Shown here: piece after piece, positions 4,165 to 49,119 of the stretch
How the letters are laid out: each line of letters starts with the position of its first letter
How positions within the stretch are numbered: position 1 is the stretch's first letter
Assembly (NCBI GenBank): GCA_002269645.1
Contig: NIVC01000420.1
Location: 554,217 to 618,216, forward strand
DNA from: Macrostomum lignano
Taxonomy: Eukaryota
Direction: 5' to 3'
Length of the DNA stretch: 64,000 nucleotides
The notes under the pieces: model-generated
What the model was told of the DNA's origin: nothing
Database searches by the model: none
Seen by the model: the letters and a program-made list of their open reading frames with translations, nothing else
Made by a program: the position numbers and the translations under genes

Positions 4165-4640
4165 CAATCAAACATCCGGGCACACTATTTGAAACAAACA
4201 TCCAGGCACACCAGTTTAAACAAACATCCGGGCACACCAGTTTAATCAAACATCCGGGCACACCAGTTTAATCAAACATCCGGGCACACCAGTTTAATCA
4301 AACATCCGGGCACACCAGTTTAATCAAACATCCGGGCACACCAGTTTAATCAAACATCCGGGCACACCAGTTTAAACAAACATCCAGGCACACCAGTTTA
4401 AACAAACATCCAGGCACACCAGTTCAAACAAACATCCAGGCACACCAGTTCAAACAAACATCCGGGCACACCAGTTTAAACAAACATCCAGGCACACCAG
4501 TTTAAACAAACATCCAGGCACACCAGTTTAAACAAACATCCGGGCACACCAGTTTAAACAAACATCCGGGCACACTATTTGAAACAAACATCCAGGCACA
4601 TCCGTTTTAACAAACATCCAGACACACCAGTTTAAACATT
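4165..4640. repeat. 26-bp minisatellite (AAACATCCGGGCACACCAGTTTAATC)
   Basis: CACCAG recurs at 4261, 4287 and onward. Confidence 0.95.
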
Positions 4641-7889: not shown

Positions 7890-7910
7890 GTCTGTCTGTC
7901 TATGTGTCTG

Positions 7911-7941
<31 letters not shown>

Positions 7942-8185: not shown

Positions 8186-9712
8186 GTTATCGTCTCTGCT
8201 GCCACATGCAAACATGTCCAAATCGCATGCTCTGACAGCTTAAGAGGCAAAGCTCGCATGGACGACACGGCCGAGGAGTCCCCATCATAAAACGATCCCA
8301 TAGCCGGTGTTTTGCATCGTAAAAAAGCTGCCTAGCAATAAGCAGCCCCAGCCCGTGAGTGAGCAGGTCTCCCAGCACGCGATCTCTCTCTCTCTCTCTC
8401 TCTCTCGCACAGTCTAAAAGAGCGACCCAACTGTCCCGACAACAAAACAGTCGGGCACTCAGCACCGCCATCCCGGACTCATTCACAGATCTGGAGAAGT
8501 TTAGAAAGCGGAGAAAGCTTTAAAAAACCTGAAACTGAGTTTGAGTTCAGCAACTTCCACTCCCCCCCCATCCCGTTGTCGTGGCGGTTTCTTTAACAAG
8601 CACTCCCGCCTCCAGTTTGGGTGCGGTCCAGAAAAGTATAGGGACCAAAAGAACTTGATTTTTTCTTCCATAAAAAGCGATTTCTGCTGGGCAAGGAGTG
8701 TGGCGCCTGCAGTGGCTCAATGCGAGTTTGCGTGACTCGGCCACCGCCCATCTCACCGCTGCTGCTTAACCCCAGTCATTGCGGAGGGCGTCAAGTATTC
8801 AGTCAGTTTTTTGAACTGCAAATCTTTAAAGCCATTAGGTGCAGTAGTGAGGGGGGGGGGCTGTCGCACGCACTCAGGTACTGCTTACTGGTTCGTATTC
8901 ATGAATTTTAGATACCTCACATGTTTGATAGGAAATGCGTTGTTGAATTGCGATTTCATTGTAAAATAGTTGAATAAATCAATTCTGATATTCTCTGTTC
9001 AAGAAACTTTTTGTTATTTATAGTTCTCTCATCTTTCATCTCCTTTCCCCTCCCGCTTCTTTTCCCTGCCACTATCTCCCCTCTTCTTCCCCTCCATTCT
9101 CCCATCTTCTCTCCTCTCCTCTCCATTCTTCTCTCTTCTCATCTCACCCATTCCTTTCCCAGCTTATAGCCACTTTCCTCTCTCCCCTCTCTCACATGCC
9201 TCTATATCTTCTTCTCTCTTCCCATGGAGATTTCTACTCAGTACTAAATTAAAAAGGCAAGGCACACTCGAGCCATGCACATCAAGCACATCGAGCGACA
9301 CAGGGAATCCTCCCAACCTGATGCATCATATAGGAGAGAGCTGAAAAGTGACTAAGACAGAGATGCTACTCCGATGCGAGCCATTAAAAAAATATGCTCC
9401 CGGGCTGCTTGCGTACAAAAGTGGGCAAAAGAGCGAGACAGGCCGAGAGCCCCGTGGCTCAATGAAGCGTTGGAAAGCCAGCCTAGATAAGGCACTGGAG
9501 TGGGGGAGGCTGAGGCAGCGCCTCATCATAAGTCTTCGGATTCTCCGATAACCTGGCTTAGTATTAGTACAAGGAGATCTTGACGAGAGCCTGGAGTGCC
9601 AACTCTACCCCCTCAATTTTAGATACGGTATTTATTACACAGCAGATTCACTGTGCCTGATTTAAAAAAATTGAATTGCTAAATTATAATAATCACGTGA
9701 TCAATTCAGCAA

Positions 9713-10700
9713 TCAGCGCCCCCCGTTGGGGAGCCAAAAAAATGCAGTACAAGTTTTTTTAATAAACTACATGTAAGCGTCTCTTTGCATTATACCTTGT
9801 AAGCCTTGACATGTCAGAAAATCCCCCCACAAGCCTTAGCATATCAACCCCCTTGACATCTTAGCAATGCCCCATAAGCCTTGCAATCTTAAAAAATCTG
9901 TCAACCTTCTAACCCTAACCCTAACCCTAAAGCATTGACATTTCAGTAATTCTCTCCAACAGTCATTATAGCACTACAGCATTATAGCGATTCCCTGCAA
10001 GCCTCGACATCGTAGGGATTCCCAAATGAATCTCTTAACTTCGACATGAAGCTTCTTTTATTTTTTACATTACACTTTTTCTATCAGCAATCCCTCCCGT
10101 GAGGAGCCAACAAATAATGAAAAAAAGTTTTCAATAGAATACATGTAGCTTCTGACTTTAGCCTTGACATCTCATTTATTCCCCCATGAGCCTTGACATC
10201 TCAGCTATTCCCCTGTAAGCCTTGACATGTCAGCAATGCCCCGCATAAACCTTGATATCTGAAAAATCCCCTGTTAACCTTGAAACCCGCTAAAATATAA
10301 CCCTCAACCCAAACCTGACCTAAACCTAACTTTAACCCAACCTATAAAAGCCTTGAAATCTCAGCAATTCTTCTCCCCTAAGCCTTGACAATTTAGTGAT
10401 TCTTTCTTCAAGAATCACAGCACTATAGCAATTCCCTCCAAGCCTTGACATTGTGGCAATTCCCAAATGAATCTTTTAACTTCGACATGACTCTTCTTTT
10501 ATGTATACATAGTGCTTCTTTTCTTTTTTACATGACTCTTCTTCTATCAGCGCCCCCCCCGTGGCGAGCCAACAAAGAATGTTATAAAAAAATTGAGTAA
10601 AGTACATGTACTTTGAAGTAGCTTCTGACTTTTGCTTTGACATCTCAGAAACCCCCCCGTAATCTCAGTTATTCTCTGAGAGCCTTGACATCTTAGTAAT
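9713..10700. repeat. Diverged tandem duplication, ~370-460-bp unit (starts near 9713, 10086, 10548)
   Basis: Each unit opens with CAGC...CCCGT.G.GAGCCAA...TACATGTA and contains repeated AGCCTTGACAT motifs. Confidence 0.75.
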
Positions 10701-35401: not shown

Positions 35402-37477
35402 TTTATAAAAATCTTATATCCATATTATACAATTAGATGCGAATACAATCCACTTTGATAATAGCCATTTTGGCATTCTTTCATTTTACAATCCCTGAGC
35501 AGGTCAAGTTTCGTCTTATGATCCCTATTAAAAAAAGAGTTGAAAAGACATTCTAGTTTATCAAAAAAGTATGTTTCACATTCATTTTCCAATTGCAACT
35601 CACTTTCTAGTCAACCTAATTCATCACTGCAACTCACTTTTCAGTCAACTTGAGGATCCTCAGCGTAGCATTAGTTATGAAAGCATGTAGCTTATATTCA
35701 CTTTTGTCATACAATCATTTAAATGGTGAAGTTATATGTAGATGATCACAAGACGAAACCGAAAGAGCTTGTAGGTTTTTAATTACAATCACTGCATTGG
35801 TAGAATTGTATTAGAGAGATCGTATAACAAAAGTGAATGGATTACACATTCATCCCTGGCAAAGTTGCACTAATTCACGGCAGCTTCTCTAATCTCTATT
35901 AACAATCTACAGGGTTCAAGAATGAAATTGTATTCATTATAAGATTCACAAGTGTCATCCCCCCTCACTTTCATCATACGATCCCCCTAGTTTATTGGAC
36001 CTATGTGTTATACCAAGTGGTGATCGTATGACAAAAGTGAGGGGGGGGGGGCATAAGGCGGCGTCGGCGCCCAAAAAGGCTGTGCAAAAAGAGCTGTGTA
36101 AAAAGTGGGTGGCTTTTGGTTTGTGGATATATTAGAGGCTGCAATTGATTGTTTCGTTGAAACGTCTATTATAAGACAATATTTTTTGTTAAAATAACAC
36201 TTAGAAGTGGTCCCATTTTGAAGTTCAATTTTAAGAGCAATTTTCCATTTTCCCTTGGGGGGGGGAACGTATAACAAAAGTCTCGACTCCCATAGGGACA
36301 GTGCTAGGTGATCGTAAAACAAAAGAATGCTGCCATTTTGGTAACAGCCACTTCAGTAACAAAAAATGACCACTTCAATAATAGCCATTTTGGTAATAGC
36401 CACTTTGGTAACAAAGGAGATTTATAACTGTCAACACTTTATTCTTATGATAATTAGGTTTAGCAATAACTAGTTTAATAATTAATATCTAAAATATCTT
36501 ATTGCTATATATGGTTAAAGTTTATAATTCAACTAATTAAACTTGCAGGTTAACTTTGTAAAAATTTAAAGGCAAAGAAAATTAAGTTAAGTATCAAGCA
36601 AGCTTGCATACATTGAAATTAAAGCAAAATTTAAATAATTAATAAAGAAAAAGGTACATTCTGCAATTTTAATTGCTATTCACTAACTAGATCAAAGATT
36701 CTAATGTATCCAATATACAATATTTGGTTAATTATAGGATGTCTTAGGTCCATGTATTTGACTCATTTAGAAATTATATACAATCGCATTTTCTATATAG
36801 ACTAGCATAACCTAAAAATGATTGTAAAACTAAGACTTCTATTTAAAAAACACCAATCAAAGACACAGGCCTGCCCAACCACTAAAGCATGTCTTAGACT
36901 TTTAAAGATAGTGCTTTATTCAATTAAATGAATAAATGGTTTTTTAGGCTAGCAGACTGCGTGGCTAGCCCTAGATGGCATAATTAATGGATTAGTTAGA
37001 TATTGACTGAGTCACTTAGGCTGAGAGCAGATTTAACTTACCATTCAAGAATAATGCCAGTGTTATCTTCTGGTTGGCAACAAAAGCAATGACTGGAATA
37101 CTGATATTATGACTTGCATGGGGACAGTTTTCAATTGTAGCAGCAAAGCCTATTCTGTCCAAAAGCTTGATGAACTGAGTAATAAGTAAAAGCCTGCTTC
37201 TAATTTCTTTAAATGCCTTGCAAAGTAGCAACAATAGCTTCTATGATAGGGTGTAGAATTTAAGCAAGTATATTATCCTTTATAGTAAGGATTTCCTTTG
37301 CAGAATCATGCTTATTATTTATATTTGATACCATAACCACATAATATACTTGTATGACATTACTTTACACTTGTAAAGAAATTAATGCAATGATTTTAAA
37401 GCAGTTTACATGATAAAAAATAAATATTGTTCTCTGCTTCAGATAATGTTGCGCCTTTGAAAGTCAGAAAAACCACA

Positions 37478-39759
37478 ATGTCTTTCAAATTGTTGCCCAA
37501 GTCTACAGAAGAGTTTTCTGATACCAAATTTTGGGAAGGATTTTTTAAGACACGCGGAAGCAAGGCGTTTGAATGGTATTTCTTTGATTTTGTGTTATCA
37601 CGGATTTAAATAAGTGATTAATTATTGATTTAATGCTAATAAAATACTTCTAGGTATGGGGAATACCAGGACATGGTGGAGTTGTGGGCACAGTATGTGA
37701 AAACTGGCGATCGCGTACTCAACATTGGCTGCGGCAATTCCAATCTGGGCGCTGAGTTGCACGACTATCAAAACTGCGAAGTCCTGTGCATTGACACCAG
37801 CTCCACTGTGGTGCAACAGATGTCACGAAAGCACAGTAAACGACCCAAACTATCCTATCGCGTGATGGACGCCGCCAATCTTGAAGGCCTCGATGATGGC
37901 AGCTTTGCCTGCGCTGTAGACAAAGGCACCCTTGATGCTTTGATGTCGGCCGCAGATTCCTCTATTCAAGCTGTTGTTGATGGCATGCTGGCCGAGGCGC
38001 ATCGGGTACTGCGGGTTGGCGGCAGGCATCTCATTGTTAGCCTTTGTCAGAAACAAGTTGTTGATAAACTAGTGCAGCACATCTCTCTGAGGTTTGTGAA
38101 TTTGTCTTATGTTCTTTTTGGAATAAAAATCCCCTTGGAAAGAAATCTTACTAATCATGTGAAAACCTGCCACTCATTCCTTAAAAATCTCATTTGTATC
38201 CCGTGCGAAATCTTAGATTTATCCAGTGAGAAATCTCCCATTTATCCAGTGAGAAATCTCCTATTTCTATACTTATTATCTCCCATAAATTTTGCAGGCC
38301 GTGGATAGCCCGAGTCCACCAGGTCGCATCAACATCGGCCTCGGACTCTTCCGGCTTTCCTTTGCCGGTGTTTTTTATCGCCCTAACCAAACTGCGCCCA
38401 GCAGCAACGGCAACTGCAGTCTCTTCCATAGTGCAGGTGCAGGACGCCTATTCCACTGGACCGCCTGAACGACTTGATTCAGTGGCCAGCCTCACTGATT
38501 GGATTCGGCAAGTTCAACTAACAGCTTATTCCTTGTCTCGATCTTCCGGTATGGAAATCAACAGCACTGATGCTTTCGGCGATGCCGACAGTCAATGCCG
38601 GGTGACTCAGTTCAGTTATTCTTGCGGTCGCACCGGTTTGCCAACTTTCACCTGTCACTTGTTGACGCATGTCGCTACATCGTCTCGTCGACGTACTGGC
38701 TACGCTGTCTTTATTGAACCGTTAGGATCGTCTGCCTGTCGATTGTCGCCTAGCGATCGGCGAGATCTGCTAGAATCGCAGTCTAATTTGCGTCGATTAT
38801 TATTTGTTAAATTGCATCCCTGGCTGCACTACCAGTCGGACACAGCGTTGCAAGCTTCGCTGTCTCGCCTAGTGATGGCATTTGCGCCTAAGCCTGGCAT
38901 GCCAGAGTCTCAGGTGCCTTTCTTAAGCACTGGCCGGCTAGCTTATCCTTATCAGTCAGTTGCTACTCGAGTTGGGTATATTGTTGAACAATCCGAGGAT
39001 GATAGTCAAACTAAAGAGCTCCGATTGCTACGCCCGGAAAGCGACCTGTCGCCGCTGCTTTGCTGCGCCAATGCCGCTCTGGTCAAGTCAGTGTCATCGA
39101 CCGTCTGTTCCGACATTGTTGCTGAAGCTGGCAACAGTCCGTTGGGTCGCCTGCTAGATCAGCTTATTGGTATTAGTAGCGACACCAACCCATGTGCTTT
39201 GATCAATTGGCCTTGCAATCTTGACTGGCTGTTGACGTACAAGCATCGTCAACCTGAGAGGCCGCCTCCGAAGCTGTACGTGTCTGCATCGTCTCCGGCT
39301 GTTAGCCTTCTTGCCGAGTATTTTAACCTCACCTGGACTGCTACTAAGCAGCCGTTTGCATTGGATTCTCGGCACCGTCTAGTGGTTCTGTTTCCTCCTG
39401 CTGACTCTCTGGCATCATATGCTGCAGCTGTGACACCCGAATCTATTGCTAGCCTAGCCAGTGCTATAGAATCGGACGGCTGCTTGCTGCTGGCTACTAG
39501 ACTATTCGATTCTAAGCAACAAGTTTCGAATATTAATGCCGGAGCTGTAGATTCGCTGCGTCAGTGTAGTCAATTTGTTGACGTCATTTGCGCTGCCTTT
39601 TCTGATGAGGATGTCAACGTTGAACAGGTAGAAATTGACGAGTCCGCTGAGCATCGCTGTCGTTGGTGGATTGCCTGCGCTCTGATGTCGATTGAATCGA
39701 AGTCTTTGATTGAAGACTTTCTTGCTGGTTTGCCTGGCTGTCAACTGATTAAAGCTTGA
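37478..39759 (+). CDS. METTL13: eEF1A lysine and N-terminal methyltransferase homolog; exons 37478-37575, 37654-38091, 38298-39759
   Basis: LLPKSTEEF..FWEGFFKTRGSKAFEW|YGEY, VLNIGCGNS, VDKGTLDAL, RVLRVGGR, WIARVHQV, LPVFFIALTKLR and QVPFLS follow METTL13 in order. Both introns are GT-AG, phase 2. Confidence 0.92.
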
Positions 39760-41077: not shown

Positions 41078-42717
41078 ATGACCAACACCAAGGGTATTCG
41101 CCGCGGCACGCGGTACATGTTTGCCAGGGATTTCCGACGCCGCGGTGCCCTCCCCCTGTCCACCTACATGCGGGTGTTTAAACGCGGTGATATTGTCGAT
41201 ATTAAAGGCAACGGCAGCATACAGAGAGGTATGCCGTATAAAACCTATCACGGCAAAACTGGCCGCGTGTACAATGTCACACCACACGCTGTTGGTGTGA
41301 TTGTTAATAAGCAGGTAAGTTCGCAAAAAATTTATACAGAATCCTGAATTTTAAAACTCCTGACCACTTGTAGTCACCCTGCAGTGACTGTCAGTCCTGT
41401 CACTTGAGTGACTCACCTGTCATCTGAGTGACTCACCTGTCACTTGAGTGACTCACCTGTCATCTGAGTGACTCACCTGTCATTTGAGTGACACCTGTCA
41501 TTTGAGTGACTCACCTGTCATTTGAGTGACTCCCTGTCATCTGAGTGACTCCCTGTCATCTGAGTGACTCACCTGTCATTTGAGTGACACCTGTCATCTT
41601 AGTGACTCATCTGTCATCTTAGTGACTCATCTGTCATCTGAGTGACTCACCTGTCATCTGAGTGACTCACCTGTCATTTGAGTGACTCACCTGTCATTTG
41701 AGTGACTCACCTGTCATTTGAGTGACTCATCTGTCATTTGAGTGACTCATCTGTCATCTTAGTGACTCACCTGTCATTTGAGTGACTCATCTGTCATCTT
41801 AGTGACTCATCTGTCATTTGAGTGACTCATCTGTCATCTTAGTGACTCACCTGTCATTTGAGTGACACCTGTCATTTGAGTGACTCACCTGTCATTTGAG
41901 TGACTCACCTGTCATTTGAGTGACTCATCTGTCATCTGAGTGACTCATCTGTCATCTTAGTGACTCCCTGTCATCTGAATGACTCACCTGTCATTTGAGT
42001 GACTCATCTGTCATCTGAGTGACTCATCTGTCATCTTAGTGACTCACCTGTCATCTTAGTGACTCACCTGTCATTTGAGTGACACCTGTCATCTGAGTGA
42101 CTCTCCTGTCATCTGAGTGACTCCCTGTCATCTGAGTGACTCCCTGTCATCTGAGTGACTCCCTGTCATCTGAGTGACTCACCTGTCATTTGAGTGACTC
42201 ATCTGTCATTTGAGTGACACCTGTCATCTGAGTGACTCATCTGTCATTTGAGTGACTTATCTGTCATCTTAGTAACTCACCTGTCATTTGAGTGACTCAC
42301 CTGTCATTTGAGTGACACCTGTCATTTGTTTGACTTACTTGTCATTTGAGTGACTCGCCTGTCATCTGAGTGACTCACCTGTTATCTGAGTGACTCACCT
42401 GTCATCTGAGTGACTCACCTGTCATCTGAATGACACATAGCGATCGCCTCACCACCCCACAAATTCACCAGGTGCGCAACCGCGTGATCCCCAAACGGAT
42501 CAACGTCCGCATCGAGCACGTGAATCCCAGCAAGTGCCGACTGGACTTTCTTCGCCGGGTCAAAGAGAACGACATCAAGCGACGCGAGGCCAAAGCCGCT
42601 GGCAAGAAAATCTCCCTGAAGCGTCGGCCGCAGGGTCCGAGGCGCGCCACCATTGTGAAGACTAAGAAGAACAAGCCCCAGCTGCTGGAGCCGCTGCCCT
42701 ACGAGCTGATCGCTTAG
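41078..42717 (+). CDS. RPL21: 60S ribosomal protein L21 (eL21); exons 41078-41314 and 42472-42717, 160 aa
   Basis: [17 protein letters not shown]...[18 protein letters not shown]|[17 protein letters not shown]...EPLPYELIA*; canonical phase-0 intron. Confidence 0.98.
41385..42432. repeat. 20-bp minisatellite (TGAGTGACTCACCTGTCATT) filling the RPL21 intron
   Basis: About 50 units. Confidence 0.97.
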
Positions 42718-42944: not shown

Positions 42945-43512
42945 CTGCAATGTACAGCCTCCCAGATCATCAGTTGCTTGGCTATTGTCACTCCCTGATC
43001 CCCAGTTGCTGGGCCATCCAGCCTCCCAGATCCTCAGTTTCTGGGTCAGCCTCCCAGATCCTCAGTTGTTGGGCCACCAGCCTCCCAGATCCTCAGTTGT
43101 TGGGCCACCAGCCTCCCAGATCCTCAGTTGTTGGACCACCAGCCTCCCAGATCCCCACTTGCTAGGCCAGCCTCCCAGCTCCTCAGTTGCTGGGCCAGCC
43201 TCCCAGATCCTCAGTTGTTGGGCCAGCCTCTCAGATCCTCAGTTGTTGGGCCACCAGCCTCCCAGATCCTCAGTTGTTGGACCACCAGCCTCCCAGATCC
43301 CCACTTGCTAGGCCAGCCTCCCAGCTCCTCAGTTGCTGGGCCAGCCTCCCAGATCCTCAGTTGCTGGGTCAGCCTCCCAGATCCTCAGTTGTTGGGCCAG
43401 CCTCTCAGATCCTCAGTTGTTGGGCCACCAGCCTCCCAGATCCTCAGTTGCTGGGCCAGCCTCCCAGATCCTCAGTTGCTGGGGCAGCCTCCCAGATCTC
43501 CAGTTGCTAGGC
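42945..43512. repeat. Minisatellite (CAGCCTCCCAGATCCTCAGTTGTTGGGCCA variants) between RPL21 and the next gene
   Basis: Directly visible; it explains the overlapping repetitive ORFs. Confidence 0.93.
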
Positions 43513-43583
43513 CATTGTTACCTAGTACTCAGACTCAACTGCGTGTTACCGTCACCATTTCAGCCAATCGGACAACCAACACA

Positions 43584-46500
43584 ATGGCAACCGCTGTGCT
43601 ACCTCCGCCGCCCTCAATGCCGGATCCGAACTCCTCTGGCGGCAGCTTCAGTCCGCTAACTCTGTTCGAATGCACCATGACCAATGCCGGCATGCTGGTG
43701 GACAGTATGCCAGTTAGGGACCTGGTCTCGGCCCTGCGCATCATTGGCACTCTGCACACTCACGTTGTCAACATCATGGACCCTGGCGTGGCCAGCGTGT
43801 GCGACCTGGCCGATCAGTTCAACTCTCACCGAATTAAATGTCCCGCTGCCGCTGCCGAGACCGCCGCCACCTCAGCTGCCGCCGCCGGCGAGGCCGAGCA
43901 GTCGCCAACTGCCAACTCCTCACTAGACGGAGGCGGCAACGCTAAGAAACGCTTGAAACTGGACGATAATTCTATGGCCTCATCGTTAAACGATCAGAAT
44001 TCTACGGATAACAACCAGACACTTAATAACACCGCTTCTGCTGCTGCCAATGTCAAGTCCGAATCTGTTGCCGAATCTGATGATGATTGCTGTATCCTTG
44101 ACGACGGCGGCTTAGGCCTGATTGGTTCCGACTTTTACACCAGCATGCAGCAGCAGCAGCAGCAGCAACATCAGCCTCGCAATCCGCAGATATCCTCAGC
44201 AGCTTCAGCATCTGCCGCTCCACCCTATGGCGGTCCCGTGCAAGATTCGGCAGCTATGAAGCAGATTTTACGCAACACCTACAAAGCTATGCGAGCTGGC
44301 GGTCCGCACCTATACGATTTTAATAGGCCGTGAGAGATTCATCTGTGTATTCTCTTAATTTTCTACTGGGTTTGTTAAATATGACGGATTATACTACTGA
44401 ATTGAGAGTAGCTTAATACTGCATGTGCCTCACAATTTATTAGCTTGAGCTTAAAAATCAACAAATTATACTACTTAATTGATTGTAGTTTAATGGCACA
44501 TGTACGGACTTATTAATGCTTCTCAGTAATCATTACAGCGGTTTAAAAATCTCAGAAGAGACTACACTACTTAACTGAAAGTAGTTTAATAGCACATGCA
44601 CGGACGGAGTTACAGTATTTATGCTTCTCGGGAATCATTTCTACGAGTTTAAAAGTATTATAAGAGATAATACTACTTACTAAAATAAAAGTAGTTTATT
44701 AGCACATGCGCATAGTTTTTCATTCCTAATAATCGCACAATCGTTTTCTCCCTACCCTCACTGCCTTGTCTGCGCCAGCTGGAACGATCCATTGAACCAG
44801 TCCGTGACTGAACGAATTGTCAGCCAAATTGTTGCCACAACGCCTGACATTTCCGTGTCTCCAGACGACTGGCGAAGTGAGTGCAGCTCCATTTTGAATG
44901 TGTATAAAAATTATTGTGTGATTTGTATATATGTAGATATTGAAACATTGGCGCGGTAGCATTTGCAGAGGTTTACAACCCCCAGTTACTGTTTCATTAT
45001 TATTAATAATAGTATTATTATTACTATCCTCATCCTCAAAATGAGAGCCTGATACTCTCTTGACACACTGATGAACCATTAATTGTATGAATTAATTAAC
45101 TAATTAAAGCATTAATTGGCCTGTTAACAATGCATAGTGCCGAGCATTAACAACAATAATAATTCCACTGCAAATTCTAATGACATTTAAGGTCAGTCAG
45201 TCTCTATGCAGTTCTAAAGCCTATTCGCATTTTTGCAGCCCAAATGCTCAGACTATGGGAAGAATAGCATCCAAGGCGCGATGTACAGTTGAAAAAGCTT
45301 AGAGACAGGAAATATTGTCGAGTGAAAAGAGTAAGTTAAGCAGTATGAGGAAATATATATTAATTTAGCCTTAAAAACTACTGCCGTGTGCAAATGATAC
45401 TACTGCCCGCGTGAATCTAAAACTCAGCCAAAAACAACATTAATTTATGCTACCTATTAACTCTACACTGAAACACTTGGACTGTAGAACTGTGCAGTCA
45501 GTTAATCGGGCAGCTAATGAGCAATCCGTCTGGCAGAAATCTTGATTTGAAACGTCAGACCATGAGAAAGTGCGGCAGATTGCGCACCGTAAGACACTTT
45601 TGCTACTTACAGGGGTGGGGAACTCCGGCCCCCCGGGCCCTGTGACACTTAACTCTCTTTCTCTCGCCTCTCCACTCTCCTCTCCTATCCCCTTTTCTCC
45701 TCTCTCTTATCTCTTGTGTCTCTAGTAAAAACGTTTGCCGACCCCTGTGCCACTAGAAGATTCTGTAGCCGTTTGTTATTCCTGCTTTCGCAATCCTCTG
45801 CGAACTGCATTATCGTTGCGCTAATAAAAAGAATCCGAAGCAATGCTTAGTAGTATGTGTTGGGCATGGTGATGTCTCTCTATCTGATAAATTTGCAGGC
45901 AAATGTGCCGTAGCAATATTCACCCCGCTGCATAGGGAGACGGTTGTCAAGCACGAGGATAGGAAGCGGGTTAAACGAAAATATTCCCGAGTTTCCGCTG
46001 TAAGTTGACCTTGATTTCTAAGAAATAAGCCAAACCCTCGCCCTCACCGTTTCCTCTGCGAAAGTCGCCGACATTTGTATACAAAATAAATAAAGCACAA
46101 CTAATTTTGTTTTAAACTGTCAATCCTATCTGTAGTTCGATGCAATTTAACATTTTTTGACAATTCCGCGTCAATGAAAAGCGACGCCGTGTTGAAATAC
46201 GAGGCCAGAAAACGGTCAATGCGTAAATATGCCAGAGTTAGCTCTGTAAGTAGTATATGCTTGGGGGAAATTGTCCACTAACACTTGAACAAGATCTCTG
46301 CAAATTAAAACCACAAGTGCCCGTTAACCACCAAAGTTTCACTGTGTACTTTTTATTGGGTTGGAATGCTTATTTTACTTTAAACACTTGCAATTAATGA
46401 TGTCTAGGCGGTATAGACGAATTTGTGCGCACCGTTTTGGACGAAGAGATGCGCAATATTAAATCGCGCGGTTATAAACGGCGCTATAGCCGTATTACTG

Positions 46501-48321
46501 CGGTAAGTCTCATTAACCCGGGGGTGTGTGTGTGTGTGTGTGTGTGTCTGCCTGTCTGTGTATGTGTCTGCCTGTCTGTGTATGTGTCTGTCTGTCTGGC
46601 TGTCTGTCTGTCTTAGTGTCTGTCTGTCTATCTGCCTCTGTCTGTCTGTCTGTCTGTGTAGTGTCTGTCTGTCTGTGTGTCTGTCTGCCTGTCTGTCTGT
46701 CTGTGTATGTGTCTGTCTATCTTGTCTGTCTGTGTGTCTGTCTGTCTCTGTGTGTGTGTCTGTCTGTTTGCCTGTGTGTCTGTCTGTTTGCCTGTCTGTC
46801 TGTCTGTCTGTTTGCCTGTCTGCCTGTTTATCTGTCTGTCTGCCTGTCTGTCTGCCTGTCTATCTGTCTGTCTGTCTGTCTTAGTGCCTGTGTGTCTGTC
46901 TGTCTTAGTGTCTGTATGTCTGCCCGCCTGTCTGTTTGCTTGTCTGTCTGTCTATTGGCGTTAACCTATGTATTAAAAATCCAAGCCCTACCTAGGCTGT
47001 CTGTATTTAGAGTATATAGAAAACTGGGCAAATTAGAAATTCATTTAGGCCACTGAGAAGTCCTTTTTTCTCAACCTCTGCTAGTCGCTTTCCGTTGTGT
47101 ATTTAACTTTTATTTGCTGGTTTTGAGTGTTTTTACTTACTATACTCCAATATAACTATGCGGTTCTGACTAGGACTACTGTACCATATAATGTTTGACG
47201 ATGGCCGCTACACTGGTAGCGAGGGCGGTTCTTGTACCAAAAATCGACTCAAATATTGGCGTCGTTATAGGCGAATCTCTACAGTAAGTTCCCTCTGCAC
47301 TTGTCATATCGGCCTAAGCAACAGTTATTATGTTGCTTGCCCTTAGCAACAAAGATTTTATATGCTGAGCAGTAGTACACAAATACCTTGTATTGCATAC
47401 AGCTTTAATTAAGGAGATATTGTTTACAAAGCAGCGAGCTGATCTGGCCGCCGCGCGGAAACGCATGCGCGTACGCTGCGTAAGTTCAATTGGTCAATCG
47501 GCTTTTTTACATTATATATCTACTCAACCCGCTACTGATAGTAATATAATTAAGTCTGAGCACTTGTTTTAAAGTTTCTTTTTGTCTACAAATTGGAGCT
47601 TCATTAGAAACCTGCAAAAAAATCTGAACAATCTGCTTGGACTTTTCTAATTGATGTACGTCTAGGTCCCGGGTTCGAATCCGCGTCGCGACTTGCACCT
47701 TAGGCCCTGACCACTAATGCATAGTAACTAAAATTTGTGGATATGCTGGGGTGAAGCGCAATAAATGGAGACTTCTTTCCCAATAGGAGGTTTTTGACAA
47801 ACTTGACTCCCACTTCTAATTGAATTCCCATTGCTATATAAATTGACAGGGGTGCGATTCCCCCATGAGGGCCAACCCCCACCCCTAAACAGTGTACATG
47901 CCTGATGATTGAAGTGTATGTTCTCAGGATTCATTGCGCACCACCCCCCCCCCATTGCTCGCTTCGCCATCCCATGCAGAAGCTGTCCCGTCGTCAGAAG
48001 GCATTTGAACAAGTCCTGCCATCGCTGAACCCGGACGATCTAGACAAGTATCGAGTTGTACTATCGCGCGATTTCACTTCGTCAGACGAGGAGACTGAGG
48101 ACGAATCCACTGGCGAGACGGCCCTGCGAGTTCGAGAACTCGTTTGGGAGTCGGAGGAGGTCCGCCAGGTGAAGCAGCGGCTAGATCAGACGTTTATGAA
48201 TCGATTTGCCACGCAGAAGCAGCGAGCCACTCTGCAGCGCTGCATTCGAAACGCCGGCTGCACGAGTTCGAGGACGCCACCCGCTGAAGCGCCGGACTGG
48301 GCTCTGCGAGCTCCCGAGTGA
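43584..48321 (+). CDS. Nuclear protein with a C14orf93/DUF4616-like C-terminal region; constant exons 43584-44329, 44779-44876 and 47980-48321, plus one variable cassette exon from 45239-47479
   Basis: In-frame joins DFNR(P|)WNDPLNQ...DDWR|cassette|KLSRRQKAF...FTSSDEE...LVWES...LD...SSRTPPAEAPDWAL. NLS-like AKKRLK and SUMO-type VKSE in exon 1. The family call is from recalled motif similarity, not a search. Confidence 0.78.
45239..45330 (+). pseudogene. Cassette exon A (92 nt) with in-frame TAG: (T)QMLRLWEE*HPRRDVQLKKLRDRKYCRVKR
   Basis: TTTTTGCAG acceptor, GTAAGT donor, same phase and C-terminal motif as the other cassettes. Confidence 0.6.
45488..45588 (+). CDS. Cassette exon B (101 nt): (K)LCSQLIGQLMSNPSGRNLDLKRQTMRKCGRLRT
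   Basis: CTGTAG acceptor (weak pyrimidine tract), GTAAGA donor, open in phase 1 to 0. Confidence 0.6.
45610..45747. mobile_element. Small hAT-like MITE inside the cassette array
   Basis: CAGGGGTGGGGAAC ... GTTTGCCGACCCCTG inverted ends. TSD not clean. Confidence 0.55.
45899..45999 (+). CDS. Cassette exon C (101 nt): (S)KCAVAIFTPLHRETVVKHEDRKRVKRKYSRVSA
   Basis: ATTTGCAG acceptor, GTAAGT donor, open in phase 1 to 0. Confidence 0.75.
46136..46245 (+). CDS. Cassette exon D (110 nt): (I)RCNLTFFDNSASMKSDAVLKYEARKRSMRKYARVSS
   Basis: CCTATCTGTAG acceptor, GTAAGT donor; clearly paralogous to cassette C. Confidence 0.78.
46408..46502 (+). CDS. Cassette exon E (95 nt): (S)GIDEFVRTVLDEEMRNIKSRGYKRRYSRITA
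   Basis: TGTCTAG acceptor, GTAAGT donor, open in phase 1 to 0. Confidence 0.75.
46525..46955. repeat. (TG)n/(TCTG)n microsatellite between cassettes E and F
   Basis: Directly visible. Confidence 0.95.
47174..47283 (+). CDS. Cassette exon F (110 nt): (R)LLYHIMFDDGRYTGSEGGSCTKNRLKYWRRYRRIST
   Basis: TTCTGACTAG acceptor, GTAAGT donor, open in phase 1 to 0. Confidence 0.72.
47403..47479 (+). CDS. Cassette exon G (77 nt): (T)LIKEILFTKQRADLAAARKRMRVRC
   Basis: TTGCATACAG acceptor, GTAAGT donor, open in phase 1 to 0. Confidence 0.7.
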
Positions 48322-49119
48322 AAATTGCATTGACTATTTTATTCAAGGGCGACTTAGCTAGAAGGCGGAGAGCAATATGCTTTGTTTCTTAAAAAAGCTT
48401 TGAAGGCTATTTTCTACGCAGAAATCGCTCGATGCAAGCCGGCCTTCAAATATTTTCTAAGAAAACCCAAAGTTTCCCATCCTCGGACTTCTGTGCTACT
48501 GACAGTAGTTTTTTAAGTCAGCTTTTGTCTAAAACGATTTCTTGTATTTAAACTTGTGGCATCAAATTTGCAATTATTTGTGTTACACGAAACTTAATAA
48601 ATTTGACTGGCAGTTTAAATACCTGGGTGTTGCATTTTGTTGTGTAAGCTGTCGGTGAACCAGTTACAATTATCTGTAGGATTTCTGCAATCGTTTTTTA
48701 TGTATATTAACATGTTTTAATTTATAGTAATTCTCGTCTCGCATATATTCTATTCTCTTGTTTGCACCGATTTTGTTTATAAATAATCAAACAGGTTAAC
48801 TTTTTACATTTTCTTAACAAGTTGCTACGGCTACAGATTAATGTTAGTGTAATATATAAACATGCAGCGCAAAGTGACTTGTCGAAGTTGTCGTTGTCAA
48901 CATAATCCATACGCTTGTGCATCCTGTTTAATACCTGCCATTATCCAGCTGTACTTCGTTGAACAAAGCTTGAATACAAATACAAGTTTAGTGTTATTCT
49001 TAAACAGCAGACCAGAAATTTACTCATGAAGGCACCGTGCTTATTGTCATGCTCGCTATTCAATTGTGTCCATTGATGTGTCTTCAGATCTTTAGCTTTT
49101 TGTTATTGATGAAAATCGA

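What the first reader, a model, noticed from the sequence alone, without database searches (positions are those of the whole stretch)
44779..48321. Dscam-style array of seven mutually exclusive cassette exons that swap a basic helix in a nuclear C14orf93/DUF4616-like protein
Seen in sequence: seven AG...GTAAG-bounded segments lie between constant exon 44779-44876 (ends ...DDWR plus 1 nt, phase 1) and the last exon at 47980 (starts KLSRRQKAF, phase 0). They are at 45239-45330, 45488-45588, 45899-45999, 46136-46245, 46408-46502, 47174-47283 and 47403-47479. Their lengths (92, 101, 101, 110, 95, 110, 77) are all 2 mod 3, and six of seven are open in exactly the phase needed. All end in a related basic motif R-[KR]-Y-x-R-[VI]-[ST]-x (RKYCRVKR, RKCGRLRT, RKYSRVSA, RKYARVSS, RRYSRITA, RRYRRIST, RKRMRVRC), while their N-terminal halves are highly divergent. 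Skipping all, or including two or three, breaks the frame, so a productive mRNA carries one. Inference: the gene makes at least six isoforms differing only in a positively charged helix that probably binds nucleic acid, i.e. a switchable-specificity regulator. I know of no description of such an array in this family. The ORF track misses it because each exon is under 40 codons.
Basis: partly seen in the sequence, partly recalled or inferred. Interest (0 to 1): 0.93.

Follow-up and report, generated by a model that had tools for sequence, protein, structure and literature searches.

The report
Flatworm exon array with RNA docking switch
A gene of the flatworm Macrostomum lignano carries seven interchangeable mini-exons, of which one at a time fits the reading frame. 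The introns hold a Dscam-like set of matching RNA sequences that probably picks the exon; I found no report of that mechanism in flatworms.

Summary
Seven AG...GTAAG segments lie at the stated coordinates. All lengths are 2 mod 3, six are open in the required phase, and all end in R-[KR]-x-x-R-[VIL].

The window is Macrostomum lignano. Published models of this gene use cassette 5 (NCBI) or cassette 2 (UniProt).

Two other genomic copies keep all seven cassettes and their splice sites. Cassettes 2-7 are far more conserved than the introns. Cassette 1 is broken in two of three copies.

New finding: a unique docking site (44944-44976), 68 nt after the constant exon, is complementary to a selector 56-87 nt upstream of each of cassettes 2-7 (-25 to -31 kcal/mol). 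No random or shuffled control reached this.

Paralogous genes carry arrays of 2, 3 and at least 5 cassettes. Their own docking/selector pairs have co-varied.

Any double inclusion gives a stop within six codons.

AlphaFold places the cassette in the middle of a 46-52-residue helix.

The C14orf93/DUF4616 label and nucleic-acid binding are not supported.

No read-level evidence was available, so use of five of the seven cassettes is inferred, not shown.

The parts
43584..44329 (+). Coding exon 1: ATG to donor CC|gtgaga, ends in phase 2. Encodes the N-terminal helical domain and a disordered acidic, Q-rich region.
   Evidence: Identical to residues 3-250 of P0001 (BOX15_Mlig033261g1).
44779..44876 (+). 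Upstream constant exon (...WNDPLNQSVTERIV...SPDDWR plus 1 nt).
44944..44976 (+). Docking site AACATTGGCGCGGTAGCATTTGCAGAGGTTTAC, 68-100 nt downstream of the constant exon.
   Evidence: no control reaches its pairing energy. Unique in the window. Identical in L002 and L006.
45166..45176 (+). Degenerate selector 1 (CCACTGCAAAT, one mismatch to the core), 62 nt upstream of cassette 1.
   Evidence: Weak pairing only: (-14.7 local). The best duplex anywhere upstream of cassette 1 is -20.5, the same as background.
45239..45330 (+). Cassette 1 (92 nt). In-frame TAG at 45265-45267 in this copy. A different TAA in L002. Open in L006.
45382..45414 (+). Selector 2, ending 73 nt before cassette 2 (-28.1 kcal/mol, 25 bp).
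45488..45588 (+). Cassette 2 (101 nt; KLCSQLIGQLMSNPSGRNLDLKRQTMRKCGRLRT).
   Evidence: Used in UniProt models P0002 and P0007.
45794..45826 (+). Selector 3 (core CCTCTGCGAA), ending 72 nt before cassette 3 (-30.7, 25 bp).
45899..45999 (+). Cassette 3 (101 nt).
46052..46079 (+). Selector 4 (core CCTCTGCGAAAG), ending 56 nt before cassette 4 (-25.5).
46136..46245 (+). Cassette 4 (110 nt).
46291..46326 (+). Selector 5 (core TCTCTGCAAAT; 14-bp ungapped run), ending 81 nt before cassette 5 (-27.7).
46408..46502 (+). Cassette 5 (95 nt; SGIDEFVRTVLDEEMRNIKSRGYKRRYSRITA).
   Evidence: Used in NCBI models P0001 (this locus) and P0006 (copy L002).
47072..47101 (+). Selector 6 (core AACCTCTGC), ending 72 nt before cassette 6 (-26.6). 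It sits at the exon-proximal end of a 671-nt intron.
47174..47283 (+). Cassette 6 (110 nt).
47284..47315 (+). Selector 7 (core CCCTCTGCA), ending 87 nt before cassette 7 (-28.0).
47403..47479 (+). Cassette 7 (77 nt).
47980..48321 (+). Last coding exon (KLSRRQKAFE ... DWALRAPE, stop).

Best explanation
This is a Macrostomum lignano gene of an uncharacterised animal protein family that has no Pfam model.

Between two constant exons lies a tandem-duplicated cluster of seven alternative cassettes. A productive mRNA carries exactly one. Six are intact in this copy.

Exon choice most likely works as in Dscam1 exon 6. One docking site sits in the intron just after the upstream constant exon. [quoted passage not shown] The pairing loops out the cassettes in between and brings the chosen 3' splice site next to the constant exon's 5' splice site.

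Two further layers back this up. All cassettes are 2 mod 3, so 0, 2 or 3 cassettes break the frame. Each of cassettes 2-7 has a stop within its first six codons in the frame entered after another cassette, so double inclusion ends at once, probably followed by NMD.

At protein level the cassette replaces the central 26-37 residues of one long basic helix in the well-folded C-terminal module. This changes both the helix length and its surface.

Shown: the anatomy, conservation, complementarity and covariation. Inferred: actual pairing in vivo, use of cassettes 3, 4, 6 and 7, and NMD.
For: Anatomy and frame logic.

Organism and gene models:
- One search identifies M. lignano (BOX15_Mlig033261g1, 94% identity and 100% query coverage to a query built with cassette 3).
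- L001, the locus that encodes P0001, is an exact sub-string of the window.
- NCBI models P0001 and P0006 use cassette 5. UniProt models P0002 and P0007 use cassette 2.

Purifying selection across three genomic copies (window, L002, L006):
- Cassettes 2-7 have 7 variable sites in 594 nt and no gap columns (no indels). Other non-coding sequence has 73 in 1707 and 158 gap columns (Fisher p=9e-5).
- Only 2 of the 7 changes are non-synonymous, although 77% of sites are (p=0.009).

Docking site and selectors:
- A scan of the first intron finds one window that pairs with the upstream region of each of cassettes 2-7 at -24 to -31 kcal/mol. Cassette 1 and the last intron reach only about -20.
- Selectors end 56-87 nt before their exon whatever the intron length.
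- The CCTCTGC core occurs 7 times in 64 kb, and 4 of these are in the array.
- 0 of 1500 random 24-mers and 0 of 500 shuffles reach the observed mean energy.
- 0 of 61 random 362-nt segments and 0 of 61 dinucleotide shuffles of the intron reach it when scanned in the same way.
- The dock and six selectors show 1 variable site in 225 nt across the three copies, against 4.3% elsewhere (p=4e-4).
- Apart from the selector block and the 3' splice site, the introns upstream of the cassettes do not align.

Replication in paralogues:
- L007 has three 77-nt cassettes, a dock at +72 nt and selectors 48-76 nt upstream.
- L008 has at least 5 cassettes. Probing with its dock complement located selectors 40-100 nt upstream of cassette-like open exons.
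- L003 and L004 have a dock AACGTTGCAGAGG and a perfectly complementary 13-nt selector 77 nt before cassette a.
- Dock and selector cores co-vary: CAGAGG/CCUCUG, CAGGG/CCCUG, CAAGUU/AACUUG.
- Cognate pairs average -25.6 kcal/mol against -15.7 for non-cognate pairs, and the cognate dock is best in 15 of 16 cases.

One-at-a-time use in a paralogue: models P0003 and P0008 carry cassette a, and P0009 carries cassette b. P0167 shows cassette skipping with exactly the predicted frameshift.

Protein: AlphaFold gives one helix, residues 279-330, spanning the 32-residue cassette (284-315), with block-mean pLDDT 87-98. With a 26-aa cassette the helix is 46 residues.
Against: - No RNA-seq or long-read data could be consulted. 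Only cassettes 5 and 2 occur in deposited models. The cassette-2 models read on into the intron and may be ab initio predictions.
- The three genomic copies differ by only 3-6%, so the selection tests rest on few substitutions.
- The docks of L007 and L008 were chosen because they pair well, so the cognate versus non-cognate contrast is partly circular.
- Selectors are homologous by descent, through duplication of exon plus intron. Their similarity alone does not prove function.
- RNAduplex energies for 30-nt windows allow bulges and G-U pairs.
- No clear dock was found for the 2-cassette array L009.
- Nothing here shows RNA-RNA pairing in vivo or NMD.
Confidence: 0.72

Rival explanations
1. 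Only one cassette (5) is a working exon. The other six are relics of tandem duplication that are never or rarely spliced.
For: Both full-length NCBI models of this gene use cassette 5. Cassette 1 carries independent nonsense mutations in two of three copies, so decay of cassettes does happen.
Against: Cassettes 2-7 keep open frames, AG/GTAAG sites and 2-mod-3 lengths in all three copies. They have no indels and mostly synonymous changes. Their selectors are conserved. Cassette 2 appears in UniProt models. A paralogue demonstrably uses either of its two cassettes.
Confidence: 0.1
2. The cassettes are genuine mutually exclusive exons, but exclusivity comes only from the frame rule, early stops, NMD and ordinary splice-site competition. 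The conserved CCTCTGC-type intron block is a protein-binding splicing element, and its match to the first intron has no function.
For: Every double inclusion gives a stop within 2-6 codons. The selector core is pyrimidine-rich and could bind a PTB-like factor. Selectors are homologous by descent.
Against: The docking site is unique and is conserved at the same offset from the constant exon in paralogues. Dock and selectors change together between paralogues. A protein-binding motif would not require the complementary site to change with the selectors. No control sequence pairs as well.
Confidence: 0.15
3. Chance arrangement or annotation artefact: there is no real exon array.
For: Each exon is under 40 codons and is missed by ORF lists. 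Some deposited models (P0017, P0028) join cassettes in series in an implausible way.
Against: There are seven matching splice-site pairs, a shared motif in the correct frame, conservation in three copies, deposited gene models that use the cassettes, and homologous segments in all family members.
Confidence: 0.01

Closest known systems
Drosophila/pancrustacean Dscam1 exon 6 cluster (docking site plus selector sequences; described in PMC6071210 and PMC4691838)
   Same: A tandem array of homologous variable exons. One docking site in the intron directly downstream of the upstream constant exon. A selector upstream of each variable exon that pairs with overlapping parts of the dock. The same upstream-dock topology.
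   Different: 7 cassettes instead of 48. A flatworm, not an arthropod. An unrelated, uncharacterised and probably intracellular protein rather than an Ig-domain receptor. Exons are 2 mod 3 with early out-of-frame stops, which adds frame surveillance. No experimental proof and no known repressor such as hrp36.
Insect 14-3-3zeta, Mhc and MRP1 mutually exclusive exon clusters with competing RNA pairings (PMC4691838; summarised in PMC6071210)
   Same: Small clusters of mutually exclusive exons governed by competition of several selectors for one docking site.
   Different: In those genes the docking site lies downstream of the cluster (PMC6071210, introduction). Here it lies upstream.
Ivanov and Pervouchine's model for the origin of competing structures by duplication of an exon plus one arm of an intronic stem (PMC6071210)
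   Same: Each duplicated unit here carries an exon plus an upstream selector arm, while the other arm (the dock) stayed single. Arrays of 1, 2, 3, at least 5 and 7 cassettes in paralogues look like stages of this process.
   Different: That paper analysed annotated exon clusters in genomes other than flatworms. This family adds several paralogous arrays whose dock and selector sequences have diverged together.
Mutually exclusive exon clusters in metazoan muscle myosin heavy chain genes, including Platyhelminthes (PMC3912159)
   Same: Shows that clusters of mutually exclusive exons exist in flatworms.
   Different: A different gene. From the search listing (title and abstract; the paper itself was not read), no docking/selector RNA mechanism is described there for flatworms.
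Human C14orf93 / Pfam DUF4616
   Same: From my memory only, unverified: a basic segment followed by an acidic SSDEE-type stretch near the C-terminus.
   Different: No Pfam DUF4616 hit at E<=1 for this protein or for 39 family members. Two profile searches recovered no homologue named C14orf93.

Membership tests
Docking-site/selector (competing RNA structure) mutually exclusive exon cluster, Dscam1 exon 6 type | Tandem array of homologous alternative exons between two constitutive exons | tested here: met
   Seven cassettes with a shared motif and matching splice sites. They are homologous to the single segment present in all family members.
Docking-site/selector (competing RNA structure) mutually exclusive exon cluster, Dscam1 exon 6 type | Exactly one variable exon in each mature mRNA | tested here: inconclusive
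   Every plausible deposited model carries one cassette: 5 or 2 here, a or b in the paralogue. Only single inclusion keeps the frame. No read-level data were available.
Docking-site/selector (competing RNA structure) mutually exclusive exon cluster, Dscam1 exon 6 type | A single docking site in the intron next to a constitutive exon | tested here: met
   44944-44976. It is unique in the window and was the best of all scanned windows by about 10 kcal/mol.
Docking-site/selector (competing RNA structure) mutually exclusive exon cluster, Dscam1 exon 6 type | A selector sequence next to each variable exon, complementary to overlapping parts of the docking site | tested here: met
   Six strong selectors end 56-87 nt upstream of cassettes 2-7 (-25.5 to -30.7 kcal/mol). 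The selector for cassette 1 is degenerate.
Docking-site/selector (competing RNA structure) mutually exclusive exon cluster, Dscam1 exon 6 type | Evolutionary conservation and covariation of dock and selectors | tested here: met
   1 variable site in 225 nt across three copies, against 4.3% in other non-coding sequence. Dock and selector cores co-vary in paralogous arrays L007, L008 and L003. Caveat: the paralogue docks were picked by their pairing.
Docking-site/selector (competing RNA structure) mutually exclusive exon cluster, Dscam1 exon 6 type | Disruptive and compensatory mutations change and restore exon choice | not testable with these tools
   Needs minigenes or transgenic or edited worms.
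Frame/NMD-enforced mutually exclusive exons | Exon lengths are not multiples of three, so that 0 or 2 exons shift the frame | tested here: met
   All seven are 2 mod 3. Paralogue cassettes of 95, 77, 77, 77, 77, 86, 77 and 98 nt are too.
Frame/NMD-enforced mutually exclusive exons | Premature stop upstream of the last exon junction on double inclusion | tested here: met
   All 15 pairs of cassettes 2-7 stop within 2-6 codons of the second cassette. The chance of six out of six early stops is about 2.5e-4.
Frame/NMD-enforced mutually exclusive exons | Aberrant isoforms are degraded by NMD | not testable with these tools
   Needs UPF1 knock-down plus RNA-seq.
C14orf93 / DUF4616 (Pfam PF15394) | Match to the Pfam DUF4616 profile | tested here: not met
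   No hit at E<=1 for the protein. No hit at E<=0.01 for ten homologues. DUF4616 is not among the 25 families shown (of 78) for 39 members at E<=1.
C14orf93 / DUF4616 (Pfam PF15394) | Profile searches recover proteins annotated as C14orf93 or carrying PF15394 | tested here: not met
   Searches returned only 'hypothetical' or 'uncharacterized' proteins with no precomputed Pfam domain. The cluster names agree. Homology too remote for these searches is not excluded.

The most novel reading that the evidence does not exclude
A flatworm gene family has kept, across at least four paralogous genes and their polyploid copies, Dscam-exon-6-type arrays. Each has one upstream docking site and 2-7 selectors, and each array has its own co-evolved dock/selector 'code'. 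To my knowledge this would be the first multi-selector docking system described outside arthropods. It would offer a natural set of compensatory variants for testing how RNA competition picks one exon. It could also diversify a long basic helix in a cell-specific or stochastic way in a regenerating animal in which transgenesis is available.
Probability: 0.55. Interest if true: 0.8.

Novelty: new member of a known kind. Interest (0 to 1): 0.72.

Why it matters
Selection of one exon by competing RNA structures is best known from arthropod Dscam1 and a few insect genes.

If reads and mutagenesis confirm this array, three things follow:
- The upstream-dock, many-selector design exists in Platyhelminthes, either by deep conservation of the principle or by repeated origin through exon-plus-intron duplication.
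- The family supplies arrays of 1, 2, 3, at least 5 and 7 cassettes with diverged but matched dock/selector sequences. This is a ready-made covariation series.
- It adds a clear third safeguard: an early stop in the wrong frame of every cassette.

It also flags an uncharacterised, confidently folded protein module found in molluscs, amphioxus and cnidarians. In Macrostomum its central helix has been turned into a swappable part.

In practice, current annotations of these genes are unreliable. Models read into introns or chain cassettes together, and UniProt names are inconsistent.

Tried and rejected
- Pfam scans of the protein, ten homologues and a 39-member alignment found no DUF4616 or any consistent domain.
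- Two profile searches aimed at naming the family returned only uncharacterised proteins.
- Foldseek of the AlphaFold model against the PDB found no match at E<=0.001.
- Rfam found nothing in 43000-49000. ARAGORN found no tRNA.
- Alternative pairing layouts were tested and are at background. These were a dock in the last intron and selectors downstream of the cassettes. The downstream signal that did appear is the same selectors seen from the other side.
- Steric hindrance is rejected because the inter-cassette introns are 119-671 nt. U2/U12 incompatibility is rejected because all sites are GTAAG...AG.
- No convincing dock was found for the 2-cassette array L009.
- Literature searches for the gene identifiers, and for docking/selector systems in flatworms, found nothing.
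- I did not use a C14orf93 sequence recalled from memory as a test.

Full report
**1. Observation**

Seven segments are each preceded by AG and followed by GTAAG. Their lengths are 92, 101, 101, 110, 95, 110 and 77 nt, all 2 mod 3.

The upstream constant exon 44779-44876 ends ...SPDDWR plus one base. The last exon 47980-48321 starts KLSRRQKAF in phase 0.

In the required phase, cassettes 2-7 are open. Cassette 1 has a TAG at 45265-45267. All seven end in R-[KR]-x-x-R-[VIL]-x-x. An alignment with paralogue cassettes also shows a shared hydrophobic patch near the N-terminus.

Within the 3.1-kb interval, GT[AG]AG donors preceded by an AG at a distance of 2 mod 3 occur only at these seven donors.

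**2. Organism and gene**

The assembled protein matches BOX15_Mlig033261g1 of the flatworm Macrostomum lignano. Identity is 94% over 100% of the query, which carried cassette 3. The locus fetched for that protein, L001, is an exact sub-string of the window.

The gene model is:
- exon 1, 43584-44329, with donor CC|gtgaga
- exon 2, 44779-44876
- one cassette
- last exon, 47980-48321

The NCBI models P0001 (this locus) and P0006 (a second copy) carry cassette 5. The UniProt models P0002 and P0007 carry cassette 2 and then read into the intron. P0005 retains the intron after exon 2.

**3. Are the cassettes under selection?**

M. lignano holds two further copies of the locus, L002 and L006, at 94-97% identity. 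All seven cassettes, their acceptors and their GTAAG donors are present in both.

In a three-way alignment:

| Region | Variable sites | Gap columns |
|---|---|---|
| Cassettes 2-7 | 7 of 594 nt | 0 |
| Last coding exon | 8 of 342 nt | 0 |
| Non-coding, excluding the microsatellite intron | 73 of 1707 nt | 158 |

- Cassettes versus non-coding gives Fisher p=9e-5.
- Five of the seven cassette changes are synonymous although 77% of sites are non-synonymous (binomial p=0.009).

Cassette 1 behaves differently. It has a TAG in the window, a different TAA at its first full codon in L002, and an open frame in L006. It is therefore a decaying exon in two of three copies.

The divergence is small, so these tests are suggestive rather than overwhelming.

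**4. The family and its arrays**

A full HMMER search of cluster representatives found 381 relatives at E<=0.001. They include many M. lignano paralogues. More distant proteins from a mussel, amphioxus and a sea anemone share only the C-terminal module.

Every member has a basic segment at the cassette position. The paralogous loci carry arrays at the same place:

| Locus | Cassettes |
|---|---|
| L005 | one, 98 nt |
| L003/L004 | two, 95 and 77 nt |
| L009 | two, 86 and 77 nt |
| L007 | three, 77 nt each |
| L008 | at least five |

In L003/L004, models P0003 and P0008 use cassette a, while P0009 uses cassette b. This documents one-at-a-time use in that paralogue.

P0167 is a transcript model of another paralogue in which the cassette is skipped. 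It shows exactly the predicted frameshift.

P0017 and P0028 chain several cassettes through odd splice sites and look like prediction artefacts.

**5. Mechanism of choice**

I scanned 24-nt windows of the first and last introns for pairing with the regions flanking each cassette. One window stood out. The sequence 44944-44976 (AACATTGGCGCGGTAGCATTTGCAGAGGTTTAC) lies 68-100 nt after the constant exon.

It pairs with a site upstream of each of cassettes 2-7:

| Upstream of cassette | Energy (kcal/mol) | Selector end to exon (nt) |
|---|---|---|
| 2 | -28.1 | 73 |
| 3 | -30.7 | 72 |
| 4 | -25.5 | 56 |
| 5 | -27.7 | 81 |
| 6 | -26.6 | 72 |
| 7 | -28.0 | 87 |

- Each duplex has 19-25 bp.
- The selector-to-exon distances hold although the introns range from 119 to 671 nt.
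- Upstream of cassette 1 and in the last intron the best duplexes are only about -20.

Further points:
- The selector core CCTCTGC occurs 7 times on this strand in 64 kb, 4 of them in the array. Its complement GCAGAGG occurs once in the array.
- The docking 19-mer is unique in the window.
- 0 of 1500 random 24-mers from the window and 0 of 500 shuffles of the dock reach the observed mean of -26.1.
- When whole 362-nt sequences are scanned the same way, 0 of 61 random real segments (median -15.2, minimum -22.7) reach it. Nor do 0 of 61 dinucleotide shuffles of the intron (median -14.2, minimum -20.2).
- The dock and all six selectors are identical in L002 and L006 except for one change in an unpaired position. 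That is 1 variable site in 225 nt against 4.3% elsewhere (p=4e-4).
- The introns upstream of the cassettes do not otherwise align.

**6. Replication and covariation in paralogues**

*L007.* The best of 771 first-intron windows lies at +72 nt from the constant exon, the same offset as in the window. It is AUUGUCCUGGAAACGUCGCAAGUUCUCACC. It pairs with sites 67, 48 and 76 nt upstream of the three cassettes, with ungapped runs of 15 and 17 bp for two of them.

*L008.* The dock is GGACGUUGCAGGGC, within 4508-4545 (+107 nt). Searching the 14-kb interval with it found sites 40-100 nt upstream of open, 2-mod-3, cassette-like exons whose peptides are homologous to one another. This amounts to a successful prediction.

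*L003/L004.* AACGTTGCAGAGG pairs perfectly over 13 bp with CCTCTGCAACGTT, which lies 77 nt before cassette a. A second selector-like site lies in the next intron. In these loci repeats have pushed the dock away from the constant exon; L004 also carries a mariner-like insertion.

The dock cores are recognisably related, and the selectors change with them:

| Array | Dock core | Selector core |
|---|---|---|
| window | CAGAGG | CCUCUG |
| L008 | CAGGG | CCCUG |
| L007 | CAAGUU | AACUUG |

Across 16 cassettes and three docks of equal GC content:
- cognate pairs average -25.6 kcal/mol and non-cognate pairs -15.7
- the cognate dock is best in 15 of 16 cases
- Mann-Whitney p=4e-8

Caveat: the paralogue docks were chosen by their pairing, so part of this contrast is built in.

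The topology, with the dock downstream of the upstream constant exon and selectors upstream of each variable exon, is that of Dscam1 exon 6. In other insect clusters the dock lies downstream of the cluster (PMC6071210).

**7. Frame surveillance**

- Skipping all cassettes gives a 290-aa product that stops 29 nt into the last exon.
- All 15 pairs of cassettes 2-7 stop within 2-6 codons of the second cassette. Any pair that includes cassette 1 stops at cassette 1's own TAG.
- Each of cassettes 2-7 has a stop in its first six codons in that frame. The chance of six out of six is about 2.5e-4.
- Every cassette of the multi-cassette paralogue arrays also has a stop in that frame. The single-cassette paralogue has none.
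- This removes the usual objection that four cassettes would restore the frame.

**8. The protein**

AlphaFold2, run on a 30-sequence family alignment, models residues 220-428 confidently (block-mean pLDDT 64-98; nearly all blocks above 80). Residues 279-330 form one helix. It covers the end of the constant exon, the whole 32-residue cassette (284-315) and the start of the last exon.

For the paralogue isoform with a 26-residue cassette, the helix is 46 residues. Helix length therefore tracks cassette length.

The cassettes carry a net charge of +3 to +7.

Foldseek found no PDB match. No Pfam domain, and specifically not DUF4616, was found. No profile search recovered a protein named C14orf93.

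Function is therefore unknown. Nucleic-acid binding and nuclear location remain guesses.

**9. Comparison and novelty**

The kind of system is known: a cluster of mutually exclusive exons with competing RNA structures. The evolutionary route, duplication of an exon together with one arm of an intronic stem, has been proposed before (PMC6071210).

Clusters of mutually exclusive exons in flatworm myosin genes are known (PMC3912159).

I found no paper in the library describing a docking/selector system in flatworms, or this array. I therefore classify it as a new member of a known kind. It has unusual value because several paralogous arrays carry matched, diverged dock/selector pairs.

**10. Verdict**

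It is wrong or unsupported on the family label and on function.
- The main gap is transcript evidence for cassettes 3, 4, 6 and 7, together with any experimental test of the pairing.

Noticed in passing
window 45239-45330; L002 11330-11421; L006 (homologous cassette): Cassette 1 carries two independent nonsense changes: TAG at 45265-45267 in the window and TAA at its first full codon in L002. It is intact in L006. Its selector is also the weakest. It looks like an exon being lost after polyploidisation, or one used as a poison exon.
   Followed up: partly
L002 7627-11297 (ORF 8190-10565): The second genomic copy has a 3.7-kb insertion between the docking site and cassette 1. It carries an intact 791-aa ORF with a hAT-family dimerisation domain (Pfam E=1.7e-7). 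This apparently intact hAT transposase ORF stretches the dock-selector distance in that copy.
   Followed up: partly
L004 7451-11013: In one copy of paralogue B, the intron before the cassettes holds (GATA)n repeats, a second copy of the ...GLPMDVWR exon end (7907-7930), and ORF fragments with mariner-type motifs (for example HPPYSPDLAPADFALFPELK). These push the dock 3.3 kb away from the constant exon.
   Followed up: no
window 46525-46953: A (TGTC)n microsatellite of about 107 copies fills most of the intron between cassette 5 and selector 6. It is the most divergent part of the locus between copies. It creates long spurious Cys/Leu/Ser/Val-rich ORFs.
   Followed up: no
window 42955-43514: A 28-nt satellite (CAGCCTCCCAGATCCTCAGTTGCTGGGC, about 19 copies) lies directly upstream of the start codon. 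It is in frame with the coding sequence, so ORF lists extend the gene by about 150 false codons.
   Followed up: no
window 37444-39759 and 41078-42717: The upstream neighbours on the same strand are a 676-aa methyltransferase-domain gene and ribosomal protein L21. The L21 intron holds a 20-nt tandem repeat (42000-42434). The same gene order is seen in copy L006, and L21 is also the upstream neighbour in L002.
   Followed up: no
window 47666-47695: The last intron contains a tRNA-like T-arm sequence (GGTCCCGGGTTCGAATCC...). ARAGORN calls no tRNA. It is possibly a remnant of a tRNA-derived SINE.
   Followed up: partly
protein clusters: UniProt gives near-identical members of this family unrelated names (BEN, CUT, PDZ, FHA, Ras-GEF, Rho-GAP, Nse4_C 'domain-containing protein'). 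No such domain is detectable in the members I scanned (P0001 and cluster representatives P0015, P0020, P0027). The names look like artefacts of merged or mis-predicted gene models.
   Followed up: no
L005 7342-7439: The only paralogue examined with a single cassette is also the only one whose cassette has no stop codon in the frame entered after another cassette. This fits the idea that such stops are selected only where there are several cassettes.
   Followed up: partly
window 44511-44709: Two diverged copies of a 105-nt unit lie in the intron between exons 1 and 2. Similar 'tactacttaa...agtagtttaat' palindromic pieces recur in introns of the paralogues, which suggests a MITE-like element.
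   Followed up: no
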